Origin: Octopus sinensis
Lineage: Eukaryota
DNA length: 64,000 nt
Assembly (NCBI RefSeq): GCF_006345805.1
Contig: NC_043008.1
Span: 70,494,001 to 70,558,000 of the forward strand
Reading direction: 5' to 3'
The translations under genes were made by a program, and so were the position numbers. This document shows, in pieces, positions 1,533-52,325 of this stretch. Position 1 is the first letter of the stretch, and each line of letters opens with the position of its first letter. Under the pieces are notes generated by a model that saw nothing but the letters and a program-made list of their open reading frames with translations, made no database searches and was not told the origin of the DNA.

Positions 1533-2500
1533 CACGCAAGCGTGAGTTTGTCAGTCACTTACGAGAGTGAACACCGTCAAGACGTGCTTAGGAACCGTCT
1601 TGAATTAAAGAACCGTTGAAGGCGCGACTGCAAGGTAGGCATCTGTCTTTTTAAGGATTCGGTGGGGAATATTTATTTTTTTAGATTGTTTTTTTTTCTC
1701 GAATAAGAAATCCTCACTGGTTCCTAGACATTTGTCTGCTACGGTCGTGTGAGAATTGTTGTTTTGGTGGGTGTGTCTCGATACCAAAATTTGGAAAATT
1801 TATGAATTCATGAAGGAAGTTTTGTGTCCTGCGACGATGAACTGGAGTACCTGTATTCTTGTGGATTTCCTGAGTGGCGGTATTGTGTTGCCGTGAATTG
1901 AACTGTCTTCCTTCGTTCTTTTTCTCTGCTCTGTCTTTCTATTCTTTTTTGTGTTTTTATTGGACTTTATATTTGGATTTTGTGTTGAACAATTTTCTTT
2001 ATGTTTTTCTTTTGCAAGCATGGCAAAAAGAAAAACAAAACACTGTATTGGAGTGGCAAATTGTGACCCCCTAGCAGTGAGACAAAACTTTAATGAAAGA
2101 ACGGTGGTGTTGAGGACATATTGTAAGTCCCTCGACACTATCACTGTGTTCTCTCAGGCGGATATTGAAAAGGTGTTGGCAAAATATCTGCCAACTATTA
2201 AGTTTATTACAAGGGGTGTCAAATATGCAACGGTGTGGTTGCTGTTTGACACCTCTGGGGAGGCTCGAGATTTTGCGAGCCAACCCTTTGAAGGGGAGAA
2301 AATTCTGTTTCTCCCCACATATAGTGAGAGGAAATTGACAAGAGCTTGGGTGTGTGGGGTGCCACACGGAATAGAGCCCGAATGGATAGAAGACACTATC
2401 CGTCGGGGTCTGAGCGGCAGCAGAGCCAAGCTCTTAAATGTCAAAATTCTACCTGCGGCTGATTGGGTTGGGTCGAATGATTCTATGATTTCCAGCGCCG
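1533..2500 (+). mobile_element. Tx1/L1-group LINE 5' end: 5'UTR plus N-terminal ORF1, 3'-truncated
   Basis: About 490 bp leader, then an uninterrupted non-repetitive frame from ATG 2020 resembling Tx1-type ORF1; cut off before a SINE at 2525. Confidence 0.6.
2020..2480 (+). pseudogene. Tx1-like ORF1 (gag-like/RNA-binding) N-terminal fragment
   Basis: MAKRKTKH...RTVVLRTY...LPTYSERKLTRAWVCGVPHGIEPEW; the last codons of the track ORF run into the SINE. Confidence 0.55.
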
Positions 2501-2524
2501 AAATCGTAATGACAAAAATATTCT

Positions 2525-2921
2525 TTTCTACTCTAGGCACAAGACCCGAAATTTCTAGGGAGGATGGGGAATTCGATTAGATCGATCCCAGTACGCAACT
2601 GGTACTTAATTTATCGACCCCGAAAAGATGAAAAGCAAAGTCGACCTCGGTGGGATTTGAACATAGAGCGTAAAGACAGACGAAATACCTATTTCTTTAT
2701 TACCCACAAGGGGCTAAACACAGAGGCAACAAACAAGGACAGACATAGGTATTAAGTCGATTACATCGACCCCAGTTCGTAACTGGTACTTAATTTATCG
2801 ACCCCGAAAGGATGAAAGGCAAAGTCGACCTCGGCGGAATTTGAACTCACAACGTAACGCAGACGAAATACCGCTAAGCATTTCGCCTGGCGTGCTAATG
2901 ATTCTGCAAGCTCACCGCCTT
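2525..2921 (-). mobile_element. SINE family D, dimeric form with internal tandem duplication
   Basis: tRNA-like head aaggcggtgagcttgcagaatc at 2921; body gtcgactttgcctttcatcctttcggggtcgat present twice; two different tail modules. Confidence 0.9.
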
Positions 2922-3048
2922 AATGATAAGAATATTCCTGACGAAATAGGTTTATTCATGTCTATTTATTGCCCTTTAACTTAATTACTACACATGCTTT
3001 GCCCTGTTTACTAAATACAGGAACACACACGTGCATGTATGTATGTAC

Positions 3049-14671: not shown

Positions 14672-16238
14672 TATGTATATATATGAATGTGTGTGTATGT
14701 GTGTGTATGAATGTATATTTGGAATATATAACAAAGTATGAATAAGGTTTCTTTTTACTGAGGTGTACTTTTGTGTACATACAATTTACATTTTACTCAG
14801 TTCAAATTTGTTTTTATTTGATGTGTATTAACATTCCAATAGATTGACTTATCTCCTTTGATATTTTAAAATTTTGTTTCATATTCTTCAATTACTCATG
14901 CTTAACCAGATTCACATATTTTGACAGTAACTTTCAAATACTTTGAATTAACCAATCGAAACAACTAGAACCATGTAAAAACAGAAAAATCTTTAACTGG
15001 GTTAACCACAGACTTACGTAGTTGACAAGGATAAGAAAAAGAACAATATAACACCCATTCACTTCTTGATAGAAGAGTATACTTTTAGAAATTTTATCTG
15101 CAACAAAGATTTGTTTATTGAATACATTTATTATACAATTAAAAGTAAAATAAAAATGCACTTGAATCGGAACTTCAATAGACTTTAATTCATTGAAATG
15201 TTAAGAATAATATGAAAGCATTTGCAAACATGAAGAACTGACGAATGTCATGTTAACTCATCAGAAAATGGAATCTTCCAGACTCACGTTATTCATATGA
15301 AAACGAATAATACTTAAATTTGATGCTGAATTTCACCATTTTCCTCCCTTGGAATCAGAAAATACATTCCATGCAATTAAACGGAGCATTTAACCCGAGC
15401 CGGTTTTACGTAACGGAAGATAACTAAACACAAGATAACTTGTCCACCGATCTACAGATTCTGCCCAATCTGAACATAAAACATCGAAACTTTATTGCAT
15501 GCCAAAGCTATTTTGGCTCCGGCCCAACCAATTTCACCCACCACATCATTTATTATCATCTCAATATTTATCCCTTGTTTTGTTTTTATATTTTTCCACA
15601 AGGGAAATGGATGAGAGAACATTACAAGGGCGAAATACAGAAACAGTGGTGAGTAGATAGAATCGAGAAAGCAGGAAGTGTGATAATGGCTGTTGAGCTG
15701 GGTACAAAGCTAAAACTATTGATTGAATAGGAAAGTTGATATTAAAGTTGATATGGACACTAATATATGACTAGTATTTATAGAAGAAAACCTATGCGTA
15801 GTCATTCAAGCCTTTTAAAATGGCAGCCAAATTTCACGGAAGTTATTAAAAAATAGTTCCCGCTGGGTAATGTAGTCCTCGATGCACTGAATCTGTAAAA
15901 ACACTGACTGGTCATGGTTAGAACCATTTTTATCATAGATTCCTGGAACAAACCTGACCTTGGTAGTAAACAATGATGGGACGTCAAGATACAATAACTA
16001 ACAGCAACCCACCAAGAATTACATTTGTCATAACACCACTGATCGAAGTCTCAGAAATAGTGGATAAGATCACTTCGTCTTCAGTACCAGAAGCTGATAA
16101 CCAAAACTACCCACTTCACCGGCCACAACTTGCAGTACCATCAAGACACTAACAGTAACATTTCATCGAAATGTCAAAGGTGAGGATGCTAATTTGGGGC
16201 GTCATGAGTAAGAGTCAGTATATGTTTTGAACTTTGAA

Positions 16239-16272
<34 letters not shown>

Positions 16273-16439
16273 CGATCGTAATATCAATTTAAAATTCGCT
16301 TTCTCCATTGTATCAATAAAAGAAATTATTATTATTAGAGATGGCAAAATCGTTACCGTGCCAGACGACAAAATTTTTAGCAACATTCATTCCTATTATA
16401 GGCCATTCTATTATAGGCCTTGTGCCTATAATAGAAAGG

Positions 16440-16474
<35 letters not shown>

Positions 16475-22540: not shown

Positions 22541-22731
22541 TGGTTTCAAAAATTGGTACAAGGTCAGCAATTTGGTACATCGATCCCAGTGTTCAACTGG
22601 CACTCGTTTTATCGACTCCGAAAGGATGAAAGGTAAAGTCGACTCCGGCGGAATTTGAACTCAGAACGTGAAGATGAACGAGATGCCTTTGGACATTTCG
22701 TTTGACGTGCTAACGATTCTGCCAGCTCACC
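22541..22731 (-). mobile_element. SINE family D monomer between (GAT)n and (AAT)n
   Basis: ggtgagctggcagaatcgttagcacg head; gactttacctttcatcctttcgg body. Confidence 0.85.
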
Positions 22732-22761
22732 GAATAATAATAATGATAATAATAATAATAA

Positions 22762-27450: not shown

Positions 27451-28179
27451 ACATTTTAAACTTAATGAAATAAATAAGGACAACTGGAAATAGTTGTTAA
27501 TATGTAAGAACATTCGTTCTTTCAAATCCCACCGGGGTCGACTTAGTCTTTCATCTTTGCAGAGCCAATAAAATAAGTACTTACTCCAAAATTACTGCCC
27601 TTGTGCCAAAATTTGAAAGCAATATGTAGGAACATTCTTAAATTAATAACTATTAAAGGATTAAATCAAGAACAATTCTTAGGTTCACATAGAATAATGG
27701 TGTAAGTTCTGTGAATATAGTTCTAATGAATATGTGAAGAATGATGAAAGCCTTTTATCAATTATAAGGTAGATAATGAATGACGAAAAATTATCTCGAA
27801 AATAATCTTTAGTCAATATATAAGAACAAACTCAAGTTTTAATTATTAATATTTAAGATCAGGGAAAATTCTTAAGTCCACACCTAATAAACGAAGAAAG
27901 AAGTCTTAGGGGTATATCACATAGGTATATGTGTATGTTTGTTTGTGTGTGTGTGTGTGTGTGTGTGCGCGTGCGCACGTACGTTTGCGTATGTGTTTGC
28001 GCATGCACACATACAAATATCTGTTCAAACGACATGTGCAGAACATGTAACATACATTTATCTGCATGCAAAAATGTGTGGTGTTTATATGTTTTCATTG
28101 TCATATGTATAAAACCCAACTCAGCAAAGAAGGCAGCTATTGTTAATGGAGTTTTAGTTTCGATGAACAAATAATCCTG

Positions 28180-36058: not shown

Positions 36059-36164
36059 GTAACAGCACACAAACAAATAAAATATGCCAAAACTTTGTAG
36101 AATCAAATACTTGTGTAACACCACCTAACAAAAAGTTAAACAATTAAGATGAAATAAAATTATC

Positions 36165-36360
36165 CTTTCTACCAATAGGCACATGACCTGAAATTTTGAA
36201 GAAGGCGCCTGTCGCTTGAATTGATCCAAGTACTCAAAAGGTACTTTATCGATCTTGAAAGGATGAAAAGCAAAGTTGACCTTGGCGTTGAACTGGAGTT
36301 GAACTGAGAACGTAAAGAGACAAAGGAAATGTCGCTAAGAATTTCGTCCGACTCACTCAG
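36165..36360 (-). mobile_element. SINE family D monomer, degenerate
   Basis: gaaaggatgaaaagcaaagttgacc body; tttctaccaataggcac tail. Confidence 0.7.
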
Positions 36361-39599: not shown

Positions 39600-42540
39600 C
39601 AGACTCCAAAGCAACAGCAATAAAAGAGATCGAAAGAACCACCACACTATCACCAATGATAACTAAAAGAAAGCCTCCAAACAACAACAACAAAGCAGAA
39701 AGACAATGAACCTCGAGACATGCCCATTCCGGATCGGAACCACTCGGACATGTCGCGTGGGGAAGGTGACGGCGAAGATTAGCAACAAGTAACGAACAAA
39801 AAAGAAAAAAAGAAGAGAAAAACACAGCAACAAAAAAGCAGGGAGGTTCGAACGGAAAAAATCCCCCGCTAACACCAACACTACCAACACGATCATCACC
39901 CTCACCAACCGTCACATCTACCCTCGTTATAAACACAAGCGGCAGAGCAAACCCCATCAAGCTAACAAACCAAAAACAACAACAGCAAAGAAATGTCACA
40001 AACTTCAAAGCTACATGCACAAACCACAAAGCCCTAATGGAAGGCATACGCAACCACTCAAACATCACTCAGAGAGATTTCATCGCACCATCAAACAACA
40101 CATTAACACTCATAAAAATCATACAAACACAAAACAGTTACAACGCCATAGGATAAAATACACCGATGGAGTCAGAGATTTCAGAAAGAACATCACCAAA
40201 AGACCATAAAGAATTGATTAGGGAGAGAACGGCATCTAACCAGAGAGACATAACATATGTACTCCCCAAAATTACTCACCACAAAATTAATGCAAGCAGT
40301 TCATCGTTTCCTTCTTTTTCACTGTCTAAAATATCCTAAATCAAAGTAGGTAGTATAAATGCACGTGGTCCAGGGTCGCCTTGGAAGTAGGGCCACATAC
40401 TAACCAACCTCAGGTAACTAGATATAGATGTTGGCTATCAGAAAGGACAGAGTTTTCAATATACAAGCTTTCATGCCCAGTTTCAGTGGATACGTGATTT
40501 ACTCAATGGGAATGGGAGGTAGGGCTGCGATATCATTTTGAAAAGGTCTGGGACTCAAGATATAGGTCATCTTCTTGGAACCAGAAGATAAGTTAGTGGT
40601 CCTGGATGTGATAGCAGCGAAGGAGGTGCTTTCAGACTATGTGTTTTCTTTAGTTCTAGTGAGTGAGTGGAACACCATCTTGGGTGCGCTCTTGGAGTGT
40701 ATGGGACTAAGAGAGAGAGAAAGTACAAAAACCTCTGAAACCTATTCAGACGTTTCCAGTTGTGTGAGAGGCACCGACTAGATTTCTAAAATGTGCCAGT
40801 TTGGACATGGACGAACCGTAGGATCGTATCTAGATAGAATATGCTGCAGATAAGAAGATGAAGATAGCATAAATTGTCCATGTTTTAAGAGCAGAAATTT
40901 GTTTGGTTGACCTAAATAGGATTTGTAAGCAGGAACCCAAATACTGTGTCGATCCCGAAGCAGCGAATTAGTTAAGCAGGTGTTGACAGGTTCATTTGTC
41001 AACAACAAACGGTGGTTTGCTCTCCGCCACAAAATGGTGATTAGAAGAAAATGTGTTAGGTTTAAACGTAACACGTTTAGCGATAGAAAGAAAAAGAAAT
41101 AGAGGGCGACTTAGAAACTTATAAGAGGAGGTTAGGAAAGACATTGCAATCAATAGACTCGCAGTGATATTGGCCCTTGACTAATTCTCCATCTAAGCAG
41201 ATCTGTTCACAATAATGCTATCTCTTGCGATACATAATAGGGAGAGAGTAGGTAAAGACAGATATTTTGATTAATTTGGATCAATCAAAAGCTTTTGATA
41301 GAGCCGATCAACAATATTTTGAGTCTGTTCTCAGGGCGTTCGGTTTCGGTCTCTTCTTCTGCGCCTGCATAGCCGCAGAGTACAGTAATACCTGCTCGGG
41401 CGTTCGAATGAATGGTTACAAATCGGAGTAAATCAGAATCATGCGCTCGTCCAGTCAAGAGTGTCACCATTCGGCACTTCGGTTTGTACTGACTCTTGAG
41501 TCACTACTACAGAAAGTGGAGATGTTGCGGGGCATCCCACCTGGACTAGGACGAAGAAGAAATGTGACGGCATACGCAGAAGACGTCAGGGTAATAATGT
41601 TGAACACAAGGTACATAGGCCTGGCTGCTAAGGAATATGATGCGATGACAAGAGCAAAACTCACCCAAGAGAAGCCAGTGGACCTACAGTTTGGCGCTTA
41701 GTAAAGCAGGACTATGCCGTCCAATAGCTTCATAGGATTCTGATGGAGGGAGTGATTTAATTAGTTGGGGTTTGGTTTGTTCCAGATATCCAAGTGGAAA
41801 AGAAACGGGACATGGTGACGGGTAGGTTGGTCAATCTCACCCGGAAATGGGCCGAGAGAATGCTCTCTCTGAAAGGTCGGGCAAAGGTGGCGAACAACAC
41901 ACATCACCTCCATTATATATTACCACCTGACTGTAGTGCGTGCTTTGCTCCAGTTTGTGTCTGACCGGAACAAAGCACCCACTTTTCCGCTTTCTGTGAA
42001 AAGGATGTGTTCCACAGGTCAGGTGTTCCATTTGTTGTTAACATTCGCTGAGTAGAGTACCTGGCATGTCATGGCTGATGTTGCACAATTCCCTTGATTG
42101 TGAGCAGTTGTAGCTACTGTTTTTCAGATTCGCTTTTCCACAGCCCGTCTCTTTGTCTAAGCTGCAGGCCTTGATTAGGTGTAGACCGAGGCTGGGGGAT
42201 TGGAATCCAAAGTGTCGTCAAGTGCTCACAGTTCTTTACCTGTCGGACAATCCGGTTCGGTGGAAGTTCTAAATAGGTTTAGTGGCGGACAGGAATGGTG
42301 ATGTTCTCATGGAGATTCTGGGTGTCAACGCCAATCGGACCGGGGTCTGCGGCTAATTTCCGCAGATCTCTGACTAGGCAGTGTTGTCGGGTGGGAGGGC
42401 ATTGTTTATTCGAGATAAACTCTACAAGCATAGAAGTGCCGTCAGCCGGGCCTGTCCGAGGTGTGCACAGAGCATGCCCCAGCATTGTACGTTTGTGTGC
42501 GGCTGTTGGAGTTTTTGAGGTGAGTCAAAATATATTATGA
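39600..42540 (+). mobile_element. Old, decayed Tx1-group LINE (ORF1 tail, APE endonuclease, partial RT, C-terminus)
   Basis: APE traces (NARG, SYLDRI); 41430-42500 colinear with 50370-51520 (VTAYAEDVRVI vs VSAYADDVTVI). Confidence 0.8.
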
Positions 42541-43009
42541 CGTATAAAAACTGACAGATATTTAATGCACTATACCAGTACTTATACATTCAATGCTGGT
42601 GAAGTGCTGTCCAAACACATACCTCTGTTTTTAAACAATTTTGATGCTATTTTTTATACTTCAAAACTGACGGTTTGGCGTTACAGTTTCAGTGTCTTAT
42701 TCGGTGTGTCATGAATAAAAAAGATTTAAATCGTTGCTGTAGAGGTTTTACCTTCGATGTGTTGTTTTTAATCCGCGCTGCGATCAAGCTGCACACTTAA
42801 AATTACTGACCTTAAAACAGAACCGATTATTATGACTAGTACTATTAAAGGCAATAAATTGATCGAGTCCGTTGAAGGGTCGGAAAAAATGATCTCCTCT
42901 TAAAATTGCTTACCTTGTGCTTAAATTAGAAGAATTATTATAAACGTGATGGAGTAGTAGAGATCATTATGGTGTTGGAAAAAAATACCTTGCAATATTA
43001 GTTTATTTA

Positions 43010-43125
43010 CAAATCTAGCTGACCCCTTCCAGGTTGATAAAATAAAGTACCGTTCACATCCTGGATCGGTGATATCGACGAATCTTCCTACCTCAAAAAT
43101 GCCAGCCTTGTGCCTAAATAACAAA
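43010..43125 (+). mobile_element. SINE family D 3' fragment
   Basis: gttgataaaataaagtacc...gccagccttgtgccta. Confidence 0.6.
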
Positions 43126-43266
43126 TGATCATAAAGACGCTGGAGTAGCTGAACTGTTAAAGCGCTGGAAAAATATTTTGAGGTGTTCCCGATATTTACG
43201 TTTCACATTCATATGCAGCCAAAATCAGCTTTGCCTGTCATCTGTCAGAGTTGATAAAATTTAATA

Positions 43267-43407
43267 TTAGGTTGTCCCAAAAGTTCGTAAACACTTGCGA
43301 AAATTGAATTTTTACTCGCCAAGTACTAACAAAAACAACAAAAATTATTCCTCAAAATAAAGACCATTATTTTCCAAGACTTTCTACGAACTTTTGGGAC
43401 AACCTTA
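43267..43407. mobile_element. Mariner-type MITE, 141 bp, TA-flanked
   Basis: Perfect 21-bp inverted repeat aggttgtcccaaaagttcgta (43269-43289 / 43385-43405). Confidence 0.9.
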
Positions 43408-44410
43408 TACTGCAAGAACGATGGGTTCGATGATATCGACTAACCTTGCCCTAAGTTCAGAGCTTGTGTCTACATTAAGAAAAATTATGATGAACATCAG
43501 AGACGGTAGAGAGTAGGAGAAAAAAACTCCAGAACACTATTCCATTTTCTCTTTTACGTTCCTAATTGAAATCCTACCGCAGATCGATCAACAAGGACAT
43601 TATGTCTGTGGTATCAGTATAATCAATAACTAGTGGGACTTGTGGAAATCTCACAGAACAAAAAAGATTAAGAGAAGCTATTTAAGAAAGAAAGCATGAT
43701 TTGCATTTTTATATTTATTTTGCTAAGTCACTTCCAGTCACAATGATATATTTTACGATTCAAAAATGTTCCTCTACGAAACGCACTTTATATTTCTCTC
43801 TTTCTCTCTACCTCTTCAACATGTAATTCCCTCTTTTAACCATGTAATTCTCGTCTTCGTGTCTTTGACATTTCTCTCTTTCTCTTCACTTCTCACTTTC
43901 ACTAACTCTCTCTCTATCTCTTTCTTAATGTAACTACCTCCTCCACCCATCTCTCTTTATCTGCCTTTCTTTAATATCATCTCCAGAACATTACTCCCTG
44001 CTAAATATTGTATCCTAAACACATCTTTTTCTCTTTACGCTCCCGACCCTACAGCACGTCCTTAACACTTCTCTCTCTCTCTTTCTCTCTCTCTCGTTTC
44101 AGTCATTGCCTTTTTCTTTCGCTCTTCACCTCTCCCTTCAAATAACCACGTGACACATTTGGCCTTATTATACCTCTTTCTCTACTTCTCCCTCATTTCT
44201 TTCTTCTCTACTCACGCTCTACCCTTCACTCTCACACTTTTACTCCACTTCTCTGTCAGTCAAGCTCCACATTTCTAATTATAACGGGCGAACGAACGAG
44301 TAGATTATTATACAGGTAGTAATATATATAAATATATATATATCCCTTTCCAAAATAACTCCCTATACAATGAACTCTACTAATTCCTTCTATTGAAGCT
44401 TTCTTAACGC

Positions 44411-47038: not shown

Positions 47039-47763
47039 CGAGGGCATATCAAAAGGTTCCCGGATTTGTTATGTTCAATAAAAAATGACTTATTTATCTA
47101 AGTTTTAACATCATCTCCTTCGAAATATTCACCACGCGTAGCACTACACCGGTTCTAGCATTTCTACCATTTTTGGAATCCAATCTGGAAGTTATTTTTT
47201 CGTAAGCGAGTCGAGGATCTGCGGTTCGCTCTGGATCTCGACAACTGTGTTAAAACGCTGACCTTTGAGCTGCATTGTCATCTTGGAGAATGAATGGAAG
47301 TCGGCAGGGGCTAAATCCGGCGAATAGGGTGTGTGTGGAGGTGATACCATGTTTTTGGTGAGAAGCTCACAGGTGACGAGAGCTCGGGGAAGAATCCACT
47401 TTTTCGAGCTCCACCGATGCGGTTGGCTTCCCCGAATGTTCTCCCTTAAACGCTGCAAAACAACGTAGTAGGACTCTCCATTGACGGTCTGGCCCTGGGG
47501 AATGAATTCTCGATGCGCAATACCACATTCCTAAGTGATGACGCTCATGCCAGATTTTCCAGATCGCTCATCGTCTTCCAGACTATAGCATGCATGTGAT
47601 CGCAAAACCAAAAATTTCACAGCTTGCGAAATAAACACAGCGATGTCACCCGACACACTGCCGCATGAAGGTCACTGCTAGCTCTTTTTGCGTACGCAAC
47701 CGTTTGCTGCAATCTGTTGTCACGCTACAGAGCAAGTCCGGAAACTTTTTGTACCATATCGTA
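47039..47763 (-). mobile_element. Internally deleted mariner (DD34D-like)
   Basis: PHTPYSPDLAPADF..F.KM..QLKGQRFNTVVEIQ; degenerate TIRs at both ends. Confidence 0.8.
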
Positions 47764-48241: not shown

Positions 48242-48242
<1 letters not shown>

Positions 48243-48296
<54 letters not shown>

Positions 48297-48477
48297 GTCT
48301 ATCTGTCTGTCTGTCTGTCTGTCTGCCTGCCTGCCTGTCTGCCTGCCTGCCTGCCTGTCTGTCTGCCTGCCTGCCTGTCTGTCTGCCTGCCTGCCTGCCT
48401 GCCTGTCTGTCTGTCTGTCTGTATGTCTGTCTGTCTGTCTGTCTGTCCACGTAGTTAGCTAGGTAGTTTATATATAT

Positions 48478-49469: not shown

Positions 49470-49470
<1 letters not shown>

Positions 49471-49568
<98 letters not shown>

Positions 49569-49630
49569 ATATCTATCTGTCTATCTACCTGTCTGTCTGT
49601 CTAACTATCTGTCTGTCTATCTATCTATCA

Positions 49631-49694
<64 letters not shown>

Positions 49695-49703
49695 GTCTAT
49701 CTG

Positions 49704-49776
<73 letters not shown>

Positions 49777-49829
49777 ATATCTATCAACCTACCTACCTAC
49801 CTACCTACCTACCTACCTACCTACCTACA

Positions 49830-49928
<99 letters not shown>
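49471..49928. repeat. About 460-bp (TATC)n array with CTGT/CTAC variants
   Basis: Direct reading; abuts the LINE 5' junction. Confidence 0.97.
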
Positions 49929-51881
49929 GTGAGTCGAGGAGCCGTAACGCTGCTGAAGAAAGATCCAAACAAGGGGAACATTATAGATAACTTTAGACCA
50001 ATCACTCTGCTCAATGCAGATCTGAAAATTTTGACAAAGGTGTTAGCCAAGAGGTTGGCGCTTGTCATCGAGAAACTGGTCGACAACGCACAAACGTGCG
50101 CCGTGCCGGGCCGGAGCATCCATGACAACCTCCATCTGATGCATTACATCATAGACAGAGTAGTTAAGGAATCTGGCATGGGTGGGGCCCTGATCAACTT
50201 GGATCAATCGAAAGCCTTCGATAGGGTAGACCATCGATACTTGGAGGCAGTCCTGAGAGCAGCTGGTTTCGGTCCCGTCTTCCGCGGCTGGATAGCTGCC
50301 TTGTATAGAGGCATCCGTTCGGTAATTCGTGTAAATGGACATCTATCGAGACCTTTCGACATTGCACGTTCGGTCCGTCAGGGATGCCCCCTCTCCGCGC
50401 TTCTATACGTATTGACTCTTGTGCCACTACTGCGGAAGCTGGCAACCCTGAGGGGCATCCCGCGAGAATTGGGATGCGGGTCGAGCGTGTCTGCATACGC
50501 GGACGACGTCACCGTCATAGTGTCAAGCCACAAGCACATCGAGCTGGTCGGCGAGACACTGAAAGACTACGAAGCGGTAACAGGAGCAAAAATCAACCGG
50601 GAAAAGTCAGTGGGCTTGCGGCTCGGCACCTGGAGAAGCAAGCCCATGCCGTCCACCAGTACCTCCGTCGTGGGACGCTGAACGGACGGTTCGGTTGAGT
50701 TGCTCGGGGTCTGGTTCGGTCCGGACCTCCAAATGGAGAAGAACTGGAACGAGATAACGAGTAGGGTGGTCACTCTCGCCCAGCAATGGGCCGAGAGGAA
50801 ACTGTCCCTAAAAGGTCGGGCGGAGGTGACGAACACGTACATCGCGTCCATCATCTACTACCGCCTGACCGTCGTACCTTGTCCCGACCCTACCATCACC
50901 AAACTAGAACGCATTCTCTTCCGCTTCTTGTGGAAAGGATGCGTCCCGATGGTCAGGCGATCCATTTGCTGTCAACACCCGTTAAAAGGAGGGCTGGGTA
51001 TGCCATGGTTGATGATGCGCAGACACGCGCTGAGACTGCGACATCTCCGACTCTATGTAGACGACGGTGAACAGGTGTGGTCGCCGTTTGTGAGGCACGC
51101 GTTCCCGCAGCTCGTCTTCATGACCGAACTGCAGTCGTGGATCAAAAAGAGGCCGAGCAAGGGCGAATGGCACCGCGAGTGTCGCGTTGCTCTCAAGCAA
51201 CTCTGCCGTCCCGGGTCAACGTTGAGTGACTTCAACACGACCAAAGCATTCTATAGGGGATTAGTGGAGGGTAGGTACGACGACGAACTTGGGGCAAACC
51301 TGGGCGTCGACGAGGAATACCTGACCCGCCTGTTTGAAACGACTTTCGGGCCGGGACCTATGGACAACTTCCAGAGATCCCTGGCCTGGCGGTGCTACCG
51401 AGAAGCGCTACCCGTTCGGGATAAGCTCTATAGGCATGGCTCAAGAAACACGGGGCCGACCTGCCCGAGATGTGGGCAGAGCGACGAAACCGCTCTGCAC
51501 GCAATCGTGCAGTGTCCAACAATCTCCGACCTGTGGGCTTATGTCGAACGACTGCTGTCACGTGTGGGACGTGTCGGTTTATCAGCCGAGTCTATCGTTA
51601 ATATCGTCACGCCTCCTTCCTTCAAACGGGAAGGAAGAGCTATTTTTATCATACTTGTGGCTATGGCGAAAGAATGTATCTGGTGGACGCGCCTGAAAGG
51701 ATTAGAGACAAACACTTTCCTCTCTGGTCAATTTCTCATCAACTTCTTCAAGTATCACTTGAAGAGGAAAGTGAGAGTAGAGAGGCAGGTTTTGTCTAGT
51801 GAATGTTTTAAAAAAAGATGGGTGAATGTAACAAGGATGGCACGTATGAATGACGAAGCCACCTTGACTATGATTCTATGA
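49929..51881 (+). pseudogene. Tx1 ORF2 C-terminal part (RT plus zf-RVT-like CCHC), 5'-truncated, one in-frame TGA at 50679-50681
   Basis: FRPITLLNADLKIL, LDQSKAFDRVDH, SVRQGCPLS, AYADDV, CPRCGQSDETALHAIVQC; the two track ORFs are in the same frame. Confidence 0.93.
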
Positions 51882-52246
51882 ACCGTAAAAATTTATACAG
51901 AGAGTTGCTTATTTGCAAAAAAAAAAGAAATATAACATGTGACTTCATTGACCGAGGTTACCGTGGTCTGTTCCGTAGGCTTTTCTTTCCACGGGTAAAC
52001 CTCACCTGTCCTCCCCTTTACACTTCATATTGACATTTCTGTGATAACGATCCCTATTGATCAAATTTTTTTCACTTCCCCCCACACTTTATTATATTAT
52101 ATCCCCCCTTATTTTGTCCTCTTTCTTTCCATTTACGATCCCTTTTGATCGAAAACCAAACCCCCTTCTTTTTCCCCCAAAAGAAAAGCTCTACCTTGTA
52201 ATTTTGTCCTGTCTGTGTGCAGCCCTGTGTGGCTAATAAAGAAACA
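49929..52246 (+). mobile_element. Young 5'-truncated Tx1-group LINE inside (TATC)n
   Basis: RT and C-terminal CCHC in one frame, about 365-bp 3'UTR ending AATAAAgaaaca, TATC arrays on both sides. Confidence 0.93.

Positions 52247-52324
<78 letters not shown>
52247..52324. repeat. (TATC)n array directly after the LINE 3' end
   Basis: Direct reading. Confidence 0.97.

Positions 52325-52325
<1 letters not shown>

What the first reader, a model, noticed from the sequence alone, without database searches (positions are those of the whole stretch)
2690..2723. SINE internal tail matches the 3' terminus of the Tx1 LINE
Seen: the reverse complement of 2690-2723 (ctgtgtttagccccttgtgggtaataaagaaata) matches the last 34 nt of the LINE at 52213-52246 (ctgtgtgcagccctgtgtggctaataaagaaaca) at 28/34 without gaps. 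Both include AATAAA and can form a small stem-loop at the same place (agcc/ggct in the LINE, gccc/gggt in the SINE). Established: many SINEs share 3' ends with their partner LINE, which RT recognises. Inference: this SINE module is or was mobilised by a Tx1-group LINE, a less common pairing than L2/CR1/RTE.
Basis: partly seen in the sequence, partly recalled or inferred. Interest (0 to 1): 0.72.

Follow-up and report, generated by a model that had tools for sequence, protein, structure and literature searches.

The report
Octopod SINE shares LINE 3' hairpin tail
A short mobile element (SINE) in this octopus-like genome carries the same roughly 50-base hairpin-forming end as an L1/Tx1-type LINE in the same window, so it is a real but fairly ordinary SINE-LINE partnership with an unusual partner clade.

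Summary
The reverse complement of 2690-2723 matches 52213-52246 at 28/34 without gaps. Simulated sequences gave a mean best match of 20.8 and a maximum of 24.

The match is homologous. With gaps it extends to about 50 nt. In a 22-kb Argonauta hians locus, at least five complete SINE 3' ends carry the same tail and run straight into unrelated flank. The Argonauta LINE 3'UTR ends in almost the same sequence.

The shared segment folds into an imperfect hairpin: TTCT-G-TGT...GGCC-cttgt-GGCT-A-ATA-R-AGAA. The stem covaries and the loop is conserved. The AATAAA is the 3' arm of this stem.

The LINE at 49929-52246 is 5'-truncated. It has RT and zf-RVT domains, and a full-length Argonauta relative adds an APE endonuclease and an ORF1. 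It is closest to L1 ORF2p among solved structures and closer to a fish protein annotated "Transposon TX1" than to a plant L1. Tx1 membership is likely but was not tested by phylogeny.

The SINE and a 5'-truncated second SINE are bounded together by a 17-bp target-site duplication, so the last mobilisation used the other tail.

This is a new member of a known kind and of moderate interest.

The parts
2690..2723 (-). It is the 3' hairpin of the SINE tail: TCT-G-TGT-tta-GCCC-cttgt-GGGT-a-ATA-a-AGA.
   Evidence: 28/34 to the LINE end. Covariance-model hit at 2687-2728, 33 bits, as a training member. Pair counts.
2692..2738 (-). Full LINE-related tail of the SINE, about 47 nt of gapped similarity to the LINE 3' end.
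   Evidence: Local alignment score 43 against a shuffle maximum of 26. It also aligns to the Argonauta LINE 3' end with score 45.
2688..2920 (-). SINE module 1 ('tail C' SINE). It has a head with A-box-like and B-box-like motifs, a conserved core (...GGGGTCGATAAATTAAGTACCAG...) and the LINE-type tail.
   Evidence: Read directly. Homologous across body and tail to Argonauta SINE copies. ARAGORN and Rfam do not call a tRNA here, so the tRNA origin is judged by eye only.
2524..2687 (-). SINE module 2. It is 5'-truncated, is 87.5% identical to module 1 over the core, and has a different terminal tail ('tail A': ...GGGTcttgtGCCTagagtagaaaa).
   Evidence: blastn, sequence, hairpin scan.
2921..2937 (-). 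5' copy of the target-site duplication of the whole dimer (GAATATTCTTATCATTA).
   Evidence: 15/17 match to 2507-2523. 0 of 2000 shuffles reach the score.
2507..2523 (-). 3' copy of the target-site duplication of the whole dimer (GAATATTTTTGTCATTA).
49929..51881 (+). 5'-truncated LINE ORF2 remnant in one frame with one in-frame stop at 50679-50681. It carries an RT domain and a C-terminal CX2CX8HX4C zinc-binding domain.
   Evidence: Pfam RVT_1 E = 1e-31 and zf-RVT E = 3e-8. Translation. 64% identical to the Argonauta element. The best solved-structure match is human L1 ORF2p, E = 1e-31.
51882..52246 (+). LINE 3'UTR. Its last roughly 50 nt (52194-52246) are the tail shared with the SINE, and the hairpin is at 52208-52249.
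49470..49928 (+). (TATC)n microsatellite abutting the truncated 5' end of the LINE.
   Evidence: TRF reports 114.8 copies. Sequence.
52247..52325 (+). (TATC)n microsatellite directly after the LINE 3' end. The Argonauta SINE and LINE tails end in a single ...ATCTAT.
   Evidence: TRF reports 19.8 copies at 100% matches..
16403..16442 (+). Example of SINE 'tail A'. It is a perfect 13-bp hairpin with the same architecture and the same CTTGT loop (TTCTATTATAGGC-cttgt-GCCTATAATAGAA), followed by (ATT)n.
   Evidence: Fold energy -21 kcal/mol, z = -3.85. Sequence.

Best explanation
The segment is the LINE-derived 3' tail of an octopod SINE family transcribed by RNA polymerase III. About 50-70 nt at the SINE's 3' end are homologous to the 3' terminus of an L1-group, Tx1-like LINE lineage. 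That lineage has an ORF1 with a weak CCHC match and an ORF2 made of APE endonuclease, RT and zf-RVT domains.

The shared segment forms an imperfect hairpin. A 4-bp GC-rich tip carries a conserved CUUGU loop. It is extended by UGU/AUA and UUCU/AGAA helices, and is followed by a few terminal bases: AUCUAU in one subfamily and (AUU)n in another.

The proposed mechanism, which is inferred, has three steps:
- The LINE ORF2 protein recognises this hairpin in cis on its own RNA and in trans on SINE RNA. This is the 'stringent' type of 3'-end recognition shown experimentally for the eel UnaL2/UnaSINE1 pair.
- The terminal UAU or AUU bases anneal to the nicked target.
- Target-primed reverse transcription then inserts the copy, with 13-17-bp target-site duplications that begin with TAT or an ATT-like sequence.

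In this window the tail-C SINE sits upstream of a 5'-truncated tail-A SINE inside one target-site duplication. The pair was therefore inserted as a unit, either from a dimeric master copy or by an RT template switch from one SINE RNA to another. The terminal tail A served as the priming end in that event.

Shown: the homology, the terminal position of the tail in monomeric copies and in LINEs, the hairpin covariation, the target-site duplications and the LINE domain content. Inferred: recognition by the LINE RT, the direction of transfer (LINE to SINE), Tx1 clade membership and the microhomology priming.
For: - 28/34 ungapped, far above simulations; gapped local alignment scores 43, against a shuffle maximum of 26.
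- Argonauta locus L002 holds at least five complete SINE 3' ends with the same tail followed by unrelated flank, plus a near-full-length LINE whose 3'UTR ends CTGTGTCGGCCCTTGTGGCTAATAAAGAAATCTAT. The SINE-LINE local score there is 65-67, against a shuffle maximum of 34.
- The body-to-tail junction is the same in the window SINE and the Argonauta SINEs.
- Hairpin, 4-bp tip on a MAFFT alignment of 15 tails: 93.3% of cells paired, two pairs with double changes (C-G to G-C four times, G-C to C-G once), and 1 of 500 shuffles as high.
- Hairpin, 11-bp structure on a hand-made structural alignment of 12 tails: 93.9% paired, against at most 58% when the partners are slid, and 0 of 500 shuffles.
- A covariance model finds the motif only at SINE and LINE 3' termini in 86 kb, with a score gap from 22 to 15 bits. 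It also hits the 3' terminus of the L003 LINE, which was not used in training (19 bits, E = 0.02).
- Target-site duplications: the Argonauta LINE has TATTTTTAAAATTTGTA; Argonauta SINEs have CTATTTCAAGGAA and TATTATCTTT[C/G]TGCC; the window dimer has GAATATTYTTRTCATTA.
- LINE identity: RVT_1 plus zf-RVT in the window copy; Exo_endo_phos plus RVT_1 plus zf-RVT, and an ORF1 with a weak zf-CCHC match, in the Argonauta copy.
- Among solved structures the best match is L1 ORF2p at E = 1e-31, against R2 at 1e-15.
- The RT core is 38% identical to a fish protein annotated 'Transposon TX1' and 25% identical to a plant L1-type protein.
- Published annotations list L1-Tx1, and no L1 proper, among octopus and mollusc LINE clades (PMC13282606, PMC10294476).
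Against: - Only one SINE copy with this tail and one LINE copy of this family are in the 64-kb window, and the window's own genome could not be queried. All monomeric, terminal copies come from Argonauta, a different octopod.
- The window LINE is dead: 5'-truncated with an in-frame stop. Its tail is only 82% identical to the SINE tail, so co-activity in this genome is not shown.
- Covariation rests on few, related sequences. The 11-bp structure was counted on an alignment fitted by hand to that structure.
- Minimum-free-energy z-scores of single tails are mostly unremarkable (-0.07 to -1.9), except for tail A.
- No RT phylogeny with Repbase reference sequences was possible, so Tx1 rather than another L1-group lineage is not proven.
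- ARAGORN and Rfam do not recognise a tRNA in the SINE head.
- For this particular dimer, the tail in question was not the priming end of the last insertion.
Confidence: 0.72

Rival explanations
1. Chance or low-complexity resemblance. Two AT-rich ends containing AATAAAGAAA happen to look alike.
For: The last 12 nt are A-rich and of low complexity. Random phage and bacterial hits to the 18-21-nt core patterns exist in large collections.
Against: 28/34 against a simulated maximum of 24. 17/22 in the GC-containing part. Gapped extension to about 50 nt. The same tail recurs at SINE and LINE termini in another genus.
Confidence: 0.01
2. The 2690-2740 segment is not part of the SINE. It is a separate, extremely 5'-truncated copy of the LINE that landed between two SINE fragments.
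For: LINE insertions are often severely 5'-truncated. The segment sits between two SINE bodies. One tail-only copy without a SINE body exists in Argonauta at L002 14231-14270.
Against: The junction between SINE body and tail (…GGTCGATG-N-ATCGACTT…TGTC…CTGTGT…) is colinear with that of at least five Argonauta SINE copies. No target-site duplication surrounds the segment alone, whereas one surrounds the whole dimer.
Confidence: 0.03
3. The tail is shared, but the working partner is or was not a Tx1-clade element. Either the LINE lineage belongs to another L1-group branch, or a different LINE clade carrying a related tail drives the SINEs. LINEs of different clades can exchange tails, and SINEs can exchange tails.
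For: The clade was assigned only by proxies. Octopus genomes also hold very active Dong-R4, RTE and CR1 families (PMC13282606). Dong-type elements are known, from my own knowledge, to target (TAA)n, which is the repeat that follows tail A.
Against: Four independent LINE copies with this tail all encode the same family of RT plus zf-RVT protein (64-71% identity), with an APE domain in the full-length copy. None has the restriction-like endonuclease of the R4 clade. The L003 member of this same family itself ends in (ATT)n.
Confidence: 0.15
4. The direction of transfer is reversed. The hairpin tail arose in the SINE and was captured by the LINE 3'UTR, for example by template switching, so the LINE is the borrower.
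For: SINE copies far outnumber LINE copies. The Argonauta LINE shows a rearranged, internally duplicated 3'UTR, which demonstrates recombination at this end.
Against: The tail lies at the end of a colinear 3'UTR in LINE copies that differ by about 30-36% at the protein level. That points to an old, intrinsic LINE feature. No SINE body sequence is found in any LINE 3'UTR. Either direction gives the same functional partnership.
Confidence: 0.08

Closest known systems
Stringent-type SINE/LINE pairs with a shared 3' stem-loop: eel UnaSINE1/UnaL2, zebrafish ZfL2 (Kajikawa and Okada 2002; PMC4176376)
   Same: The SINE and the LINE share a 3' tail of a few tens of nucleotides. It contains a hairpin with a conserved loop and a variable but pairing stem, followed by a short terminal repeat. 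The SINE has a pol III-type head and an unrelated body.
   Different: The partner here is an L1-group (Tx1-like) element, not an L2- or CR1-clade element. The loop is CUUGU, and the terminal repeats are CTAT or ATT. No functional assay exists for this pair.
L1-clade stringent pairs: maize/sorghum ZmSINE2 and ZmSINE3 with LINE1-1_ZM, and Chlamydomonas SINEX-3_CR with L1-1_CR (Ohshima 2012, PMC3472496; PMC3747384 Table 1)
   Same: An L1-group LINE with a conserved 3' hairpin, compensatory stem changes and conserved loop bases, shared with tRNA-type SINEs.
   Different: Those pairs are in plants and a green alga, and the elements end in (T)n or poly(A). This pair is in an animal (octopods), in the Tx1-like branch, and ends in CTAT or ATT. 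None of the 58 pairs in that survey has a Tx1 or a mollusc partner.
SINEU mobilised by Tx1-Mar in crocodilians (Kojima 2015, PMC4494074)
   Same: A SINE proposed to depend on Tx1-clade LINEs.
   Different: In that paper the link rests on a shared insertion target (a Mariner transposon) and on shared snRNA-derived 5' heads. Here the link is a shared 3' hairpin tail, and the SINE head is of the tRNA type.
Microsatellite-specific Tx1 elements: Kibi (TC)n, Koshi (TTC)n, and crocodilian Tx1 in (TTCC)n or (TTTC)n (Kojima and Fujiwara 2004, cited in PMC4494074)
   Same: The window LINE lies inside a (TATC)n array on both sides. A related LINE (L003) ends in (ATT)n. Target-site duplications begin with the same bases as the element's terminal repeat.
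   Different: The specificity is not strict. The near-full-length Argonauta copy has an ordinary 17-bp target-site duplication in AT-rich DNA that is not a microsatellite.

Membership tests
SINE/LINE pair of the stringent (shared 3' tail) type | The SINE 3' end is homologous to the 3' terminus of a LINE from the same lineage of genomes. | tested here: met
   Window: 28/34 ungapped, and about 50 nt with gaps. Argonauta: 50-70 nt, score 65-67 against a shuffle maximum of 34.
SINE/LINE pair of the stringent (shared 3' tail) type | The shared sequence is the actual 3' terminus of retrotransposed copies, meaning copies end there and are flanked by target-site duplications. | tested here: met
   At least five Argonauta SINE 3' ends and the Argonauta LINE end at ...GAAATC(TAT), with 13-17-bp target-site duplications. 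In the window copy itself the tail is internal to a dimer bounded by one target-site duplication.
SINE/LINE pair of the stringent (shared 3' tail) type | A conserved RNA stem-loop in the tail, with compensatory changes. | tested here: met
   93-94% of cells paired against at most 58% in slid controls. Double changes in 2 of 4 tip pairs. 0-1 of 500 shuffles as high. The sample is small and related, and one of the two alignments was fitted by hand.
SINE/LINE pair of the stringent (shared 3' tail) type | The LINE protein mobilises the SINE in trans through the tail. | not testable with these tools
   This needs a retrotransposition assay.
SINE (pol III-transcribed, tRNA-derived) | An internal pol III promoter (A and B boxes) in a tRNA-related head. 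| tested here: inconclusive
   By eye there is an A-box-like TGGCAGAATCG and a B-box-like GTTCAAATTCC. The B box is canonical in Argonauta (GTTCGAATCC). ARAGORN and Rfam find no tRNA.
L1 group of non-LTR retrotransposons | An ORF2 with an N-terminal APE endonuclease, an RT and a C-terminal CCHC-type zinc domain, with a separate ORF1. | tested here: met
   Window copy: RVT_1 plus zf-RVT, with the endonuclease part lost by 5' truncation. Argonauta relative (64% identical): Exo_endo_phos plus RVT_1 plus zf-RVT, and an ORF1 with a weak zf-CCHC match. Best solved-structure match is L1 ORF2p over the RT and thumb, E = 1e-31.
Tx1 clade | The RT domain groups with Tx1 reference elements in a phylogeny (RTclass1 or Repbase references). 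| tested here: inconclusive
   No reference set was available. Proxies: the RT core is 38% identical to a fish protein annotated 'Transposon TX1' and 25% identical to a plant L1-type protein; the HMMER score to human L1 ORF2p is 113 bits. The literature lists L1-Tx1, not L1, in octopus and molluscs (PMC13282606, PMC10294476).
Tx1 clade | Target-sequence preference. This is frequent in the clade but not universal. | tested here: inconclusive
   The window LINE is embedded in (TATC)n on both sides. L003 ends in (ATT)n. Three Argonauta target-site duplications start with TAT. The Argonauta LINE target is not a microsatellite.

The most novel reading that the evidence does not exclude
The SINE families that fill more than 10% of octopus genomes may be driven by a stringent-type Tx1 (L1-group) LINE lineage through a conserved, covarying 3' hairpin with a CUUGU loop. 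Subfamily-specific terminal repeats (CTAT or ATT) would anneal to the target, so that both partners home to and seed the matching microsatellites. If so, this would be the first tail-sharing tRNA-type SINE/Tx1 pair in an animal. It would also show that stringent 3'-end recognition, known in plant and algal L1 elements, persists in the animal L1/Tx1 branch.
Probability: 0.35. Interest if true: 0.65.

Novelty: new member of a known kind. Interest (0 to 1): 0.5.

Why it matters
SINEs make up about 11.6% of the Octopus vulgaris genome. In the most recent curated annotation, 893 of the 900 recently active SINE families are 'unclassified' (PMC13282606), which means they have no assigned LINE partner.

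A demonstrated shared hairpin tail gives a concrete candidate driver for at least part of that expansion: the L1-Tx1 families, 13 of which are reported as recently active.

It also adds an animal case to the very short list of L1-group LINEs with stringent 3'-end recognition. That list previously held only maize/sorghum and Chlamydomonas pairs (PMC3747384). The new case bears on whether relaxed recognition in mammalian L1 is a derived state.

Practically, the hairpin motif is a usable classifier for octopod SINE tails.

Tried and rejected
- I first read a 9-nt repeat (TATTTCGTC at 2948-2940 and 2687-2679) as the target-site duplication of the tail-C SINE alone. That would have made the dimer a nested insertion. 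It is not significant (33 of 500 shuffles score as high), and the 17-bp duplication around the whole dimer supersedes it.
- I scanned public collections for more octopus copies:
  - Viral contigs with KTGTGGSTAATAAAGAAA gave 19 unrelated phage hits.
  - The single metagenome-contig scan with CCCTTGTGGSTAATARAGAAA gave one bacterial chance hit.
  - Genome contigs with the contaminant protein P0005 gave nothing.
- Loci of more distant LINE relatives (L027, L028, 38-49% identity) showed no shared tail and no SINE copies.
- The contigs of P0001, P0004 and P0007 end before the LINE tail. P0005 is not on record.
- ARAGORN and Rfam found nothing on the SINE head.
- The covariance model found no further instances in the window beyond its training sites.
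- Pfam found nothing in the mariner-looking ORF at 47192-47458.
- A formal clade assignment was not possible because no LINE reference library is at hand. Names given to homologues by their sources were used as a proxy.

Full report
**Observation.** The reverse complement of window 2690-2723 and the segment 52213-52246 match at 28 of 34 positions without gaps. No other place on either strand of the window reaches 24/34.
- In 200 first-order Markov simulations of the window, the best match to the LINE 34-mer averaged 20.8 (sd 0.83, maximum 24).
- The anchored binomial probability is about 3e-11.
- The GC-containing first 22 nt match 17/22, so the A-rich end does not carry the result.
- With gaps the similarity runs over about 50 nt (2692-2738 against 52194-52244). 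It scores 43, against a maximum of 26 in 1000 shuffles.

**What lies at 2500-2940 on the minus strand.** Read 5' to 3', the region contains the following parts.
- A SINE at 2920-2688. Its head has A-box-like and B-box-like motifs. Its core reads ...CTTTCATCCTTTCGGGGTCGATAAATTAAGTACCAG.... Its tail reads ...CCTTGTTTGTTGCCTCTGTGTTTAGCCCCTTGTGGGTAATAAAGAAATAGG.
- Directly after it, a second SINE that starts at position ~54 of the family (2687-2524). It is 87.5% identical over the core. It ends in a different tail...TTTCGGGTCTTGTGCCTAGAGTAGAAAA.
- The two together are bracketed by a 17-bp target-site duplication: GAATATTCTTATCATTA at 2937-2921 and GAATATTTTTGTCATTA at 2523-2507. The match is 15/17, and 0 of 2000 shuffles score as high.

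An alternative 9-nt repeat that I first took for a duplication around the first SINE alone is not significant (33 of 500 shuffles), and I withdraw it. The pair was inserted as one unit, from a dimeric master or by an RT template switch between two SINE RNAs, and the priming end of that event was the other, terminal tail. Two successive insertions at one nick would have left a copy of the duplication between the modules, and there is none.

**What lies at 49929-52246 on the plus strand.**
- One reading frame with a single in-frame stop encodes an RT (Pfam RVT_1, E = 1e-31) and a C-terminal zinc-binding domain (zf-RVT, E = 3e-8; CX2CX8HX4C).
- The copy is 5'-truncated inside the RT region.
- It has a 365-nt 3'UTR and is embedded in (TATC)n on both sides, at 49470-49928 and 52247-52325.
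- Its closest relatives are octopod: 64% identity to a protein of Argonauta hians, and 70-72% to fragments from an NCBI assembly and from JGI metagenomes.

**The Argonauta locus.** This locus (L002) is the most informative evidence.
- The LINE there is nearly full length. It has an ORF1 with a weak zf-CCHC match, and an ORF2 with Exo_endo_phos (APE), RVT_1 and zf-RVT.
- It is bounded by a 17-bp target-site duplication, TATTTTTAAAATTTGTA.
- Its 3'UTR ends ...TTCTGTGTCGGCCCTTGTGGCTAATAAAGAAATC(TAT).
- In the same 22 kb, at least five complete SINE 3' ends are homologous to the window SINE in body and tail. Each ends ...TTCTGTGTTCGGCCCTTGTGGCTAATAGAGAAATCTAT and then runs into unrelated sequence.
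- Two of them have clear target-site duplications, CTATTTCAAGGAA and TATTATCTTT[C/G]TGCC.
- SINE and LINE tails there share 50-70 nt, with local scores of 65-67 against a shuffle maximum of 34.
- The body-to-tail junction is colinear between the window SINE and the Argonauta SINEs. The tail therefore belongs to the SINE family and is not a stray LINE fragment.
- A further LINE copy of the same protein family, on a JGI contig (L003), ends ...GGGCCCTTGTGGCCAATAAAAGAAATC followed by (ATT)n.

**Structure.** All these tails can form the same imperfect hairpin: (U)UCU-G-UGU-(1-3 nt)-[4 bp]-CUUGU-[4 bp]-A-AUA-R-AGA(A).
- On a plain MAFFT alignment of 15 tails, the 4-bp tip is paired in 93.3% of cells. 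Two pairs show changes on both sides (C-G to G-C in four sequences, G-C to C-G in the window SINE). Only 1 of 500 shuffles is as high, and slid controls give at most 45%.
- On a 12-sequence alignment that I fitted by hand to the 11-bp structure, 93.9% of cells pair, against at most 58% when the partners are slid. Four pairs change on both sides, and 0 of 500 shuffles reach this. That alignment leans towards the structure by construction.
- A second SINE tail class in the window ('tail A', for example 16403-16442) forms a perfect 13-bp version with the same loop, TTCTATTATAGGC-cttgt-GCCTATAATAGAA. Its fold energy is -21 kcal/mol with z = -3.85, and it is followed by (ATT)n.
- A covariance model built from the 12 tails scores only those sites above 22 bits in 86 kb searched on both strands, and the next hit is at 15 bits.
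- The model independently hits the very 3' terminus of the L003 LINE, at 19 bits and E = 0.02.
Its fourth base is unpaired. It is A in the LINE copies and G in most Argonauta SINEs. It may double as a poly(A) signal in the LINE, but it is not a conserved SINE feature.

**Clade of the LINE.**
- Among solved structures, the best match is human L1 ORF2p across the RT and thumb (E = 1e-31). R2 proteins follow at 1e-15.
- The domain order APE, RT, zf-RVT, with a separate ORF1, is that of the L1 group.
- The RT core is 38% identical to a fish protein that its depositors named 'Transposon TX1 uncharacterized protein'. It is 25% identical to a plant L1-type protein.
- Published annotations list L1-Tx1, and no L1 proper, among the LINE clades of octopus and of molluscs generally (PMC13282606, PMC10294476, PMC8967140).
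- Tx1 elements are noted for target preference, including microsatellites (PMC4494074). That fits the (TATC)n embedding of the window copy and the (ATT)n end of L003, but the Argonauta copy sits in ordinary AT-rich DNA.

I therefore regard 'Tx1-group' as likely, at about 0.75, but not formally tested.

**Mechanism.** The best-supported reading is a stringent-type partnership. The LINE ORF2 protein recognises the 3' hairpin on its own RNA and on SINE RNA. The few terminal bases (UAU of ...AUCUAU, or AUU repeats) pair with the nicked target. All three resolved Argonauta duplications start with TAT or CTAT, and the window dimer's duplication starts GAATATT after a tail that normally ends GGATTATT. 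Target-primed reverse transcription then follows. These last steps are inference from anatomy and from the experimentally studied UnaL2 and ZfL2 systems (PMC4176376).

**Comparison with what is known.** Tail sharing between SINEs and LINEs is textbook.
- In Ohshima's survey of 58 such pairs, the partners are mostly CR1/L2 and RTE. Only three pairs have L1-clade partners (maize/sorghum and Chlamydomonas). None is Tx1 and none is from a mollusc (PMC3472496).
- Kojima's 2018 systematic comparison of SINEs and LINEs does not mention Tx1.
- The crocodilian SINEU elements were linked to Tx1 by shared insertion target and shared 5' heads in that paper, which makes no 3'-tail argument.
- In the 2026 curated O. 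vulgaris annotation, 893 of 900 active SINE families remain unclassified.

I found no paper describing this pair. Repbase entries could not be consulted, so prior knowledge there cannot be excluded.

**Verdict.**
- The shared element is a roughly 50-nt covarying hairpin, not a 34-mer plus a poly(A) signal.
- The tail is terminal in monomeric copies elsewhere but internal in this dimer bounded by one target-site duplication.
- The window LINE is a dead relic.
- The Tx1 label is probable, not proven.

It is a new member of a known kind of system and of moderate interest. Its main value is as a lead to the LINE that drove the large octopus SINE expansion, and as an animal example of stringent recognition in the L1 group.

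Noticed in passing
window 39785-42488 (+): A second, more distant L1/Tx1-like LINE. tblastn finds matches to the ORF1, APE and RT of the Argonauta element (RT about 43% identical). It has several stops, and its 3' part is replaced by SINE debris.
   Followed up: partly
window 2083-2409 (+): A fragment resembling LINE ORF1 (27% identity to the Argonauta ORF1). It lies immediately beside the SINE dimer, on the opposite strand.
   Followed up: no
window 43230-43480 (+): A SINE copy split by an insert of about 140 nt with perfect terminal inverted repeats (GGTTGTCCCAAAAGTTCG...CGAACTTTTGGGACAACC, 43270-43410). The insert looks like a MITE.
   Followed up: no
window 42860-43130, 27521-27640, 22576-22732, 36156-36346: Further SINE copies and fragments with other tail variants (...CCAAAATT-NNNN-CTTGT-NNNN-AAAATTTGAAA, and ...CAGCcttgtGCCTaaataacaaa). 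Most keep a CTTGT-loop hairpin, which suggests that several tail classes derive from one LINE lineage.
   Followed up: partly
window 48242-48447, 49470-49928, 52247-52325: Large tetranucleotide arrays, (TCTG)n and (TATC)n, surround the LINE. The TATC unit equals the terminal ...ATCTAT of the SINE and LINE tails, so such arrays may be seeded or targeted by these elements.
   Followed up: partly
L002 12020-12285 and 12420-12652: The Argonauta LINE carries an internal duplication of its 3'UTR, with two hairpin tails about 370 nt apart, inside one insertion bounded by a target-site duplication.
   Followed up: no
L002 14815-15064 / 15065-15312, and L002 1700-1745: Head-to-tail SINE tandems without a spacer also occur in Argonauta, along with a truncated tail fused to a slightly 5'-truncated SINE. 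Dimer formation therefore seems recurrent in this SINE family.
   Followed up: partly
protein P0005: A protein 61% identical to the octopod LINE ORF2 is deposited as 'MAG: zinc-binding domain-containing protein [Herbaspirillum sp.]'. This is most likely host DNA mis-binned into a bacterial MAG.
   Followed up: no
window 47192-47458 (-): An 88-aa ORF containing ...SPDLAPADFHSFSKM..., which by eye is reminiscent of the C-terminus of mariner-type transposases. Pfam gives no hit.
   Followed up: partly
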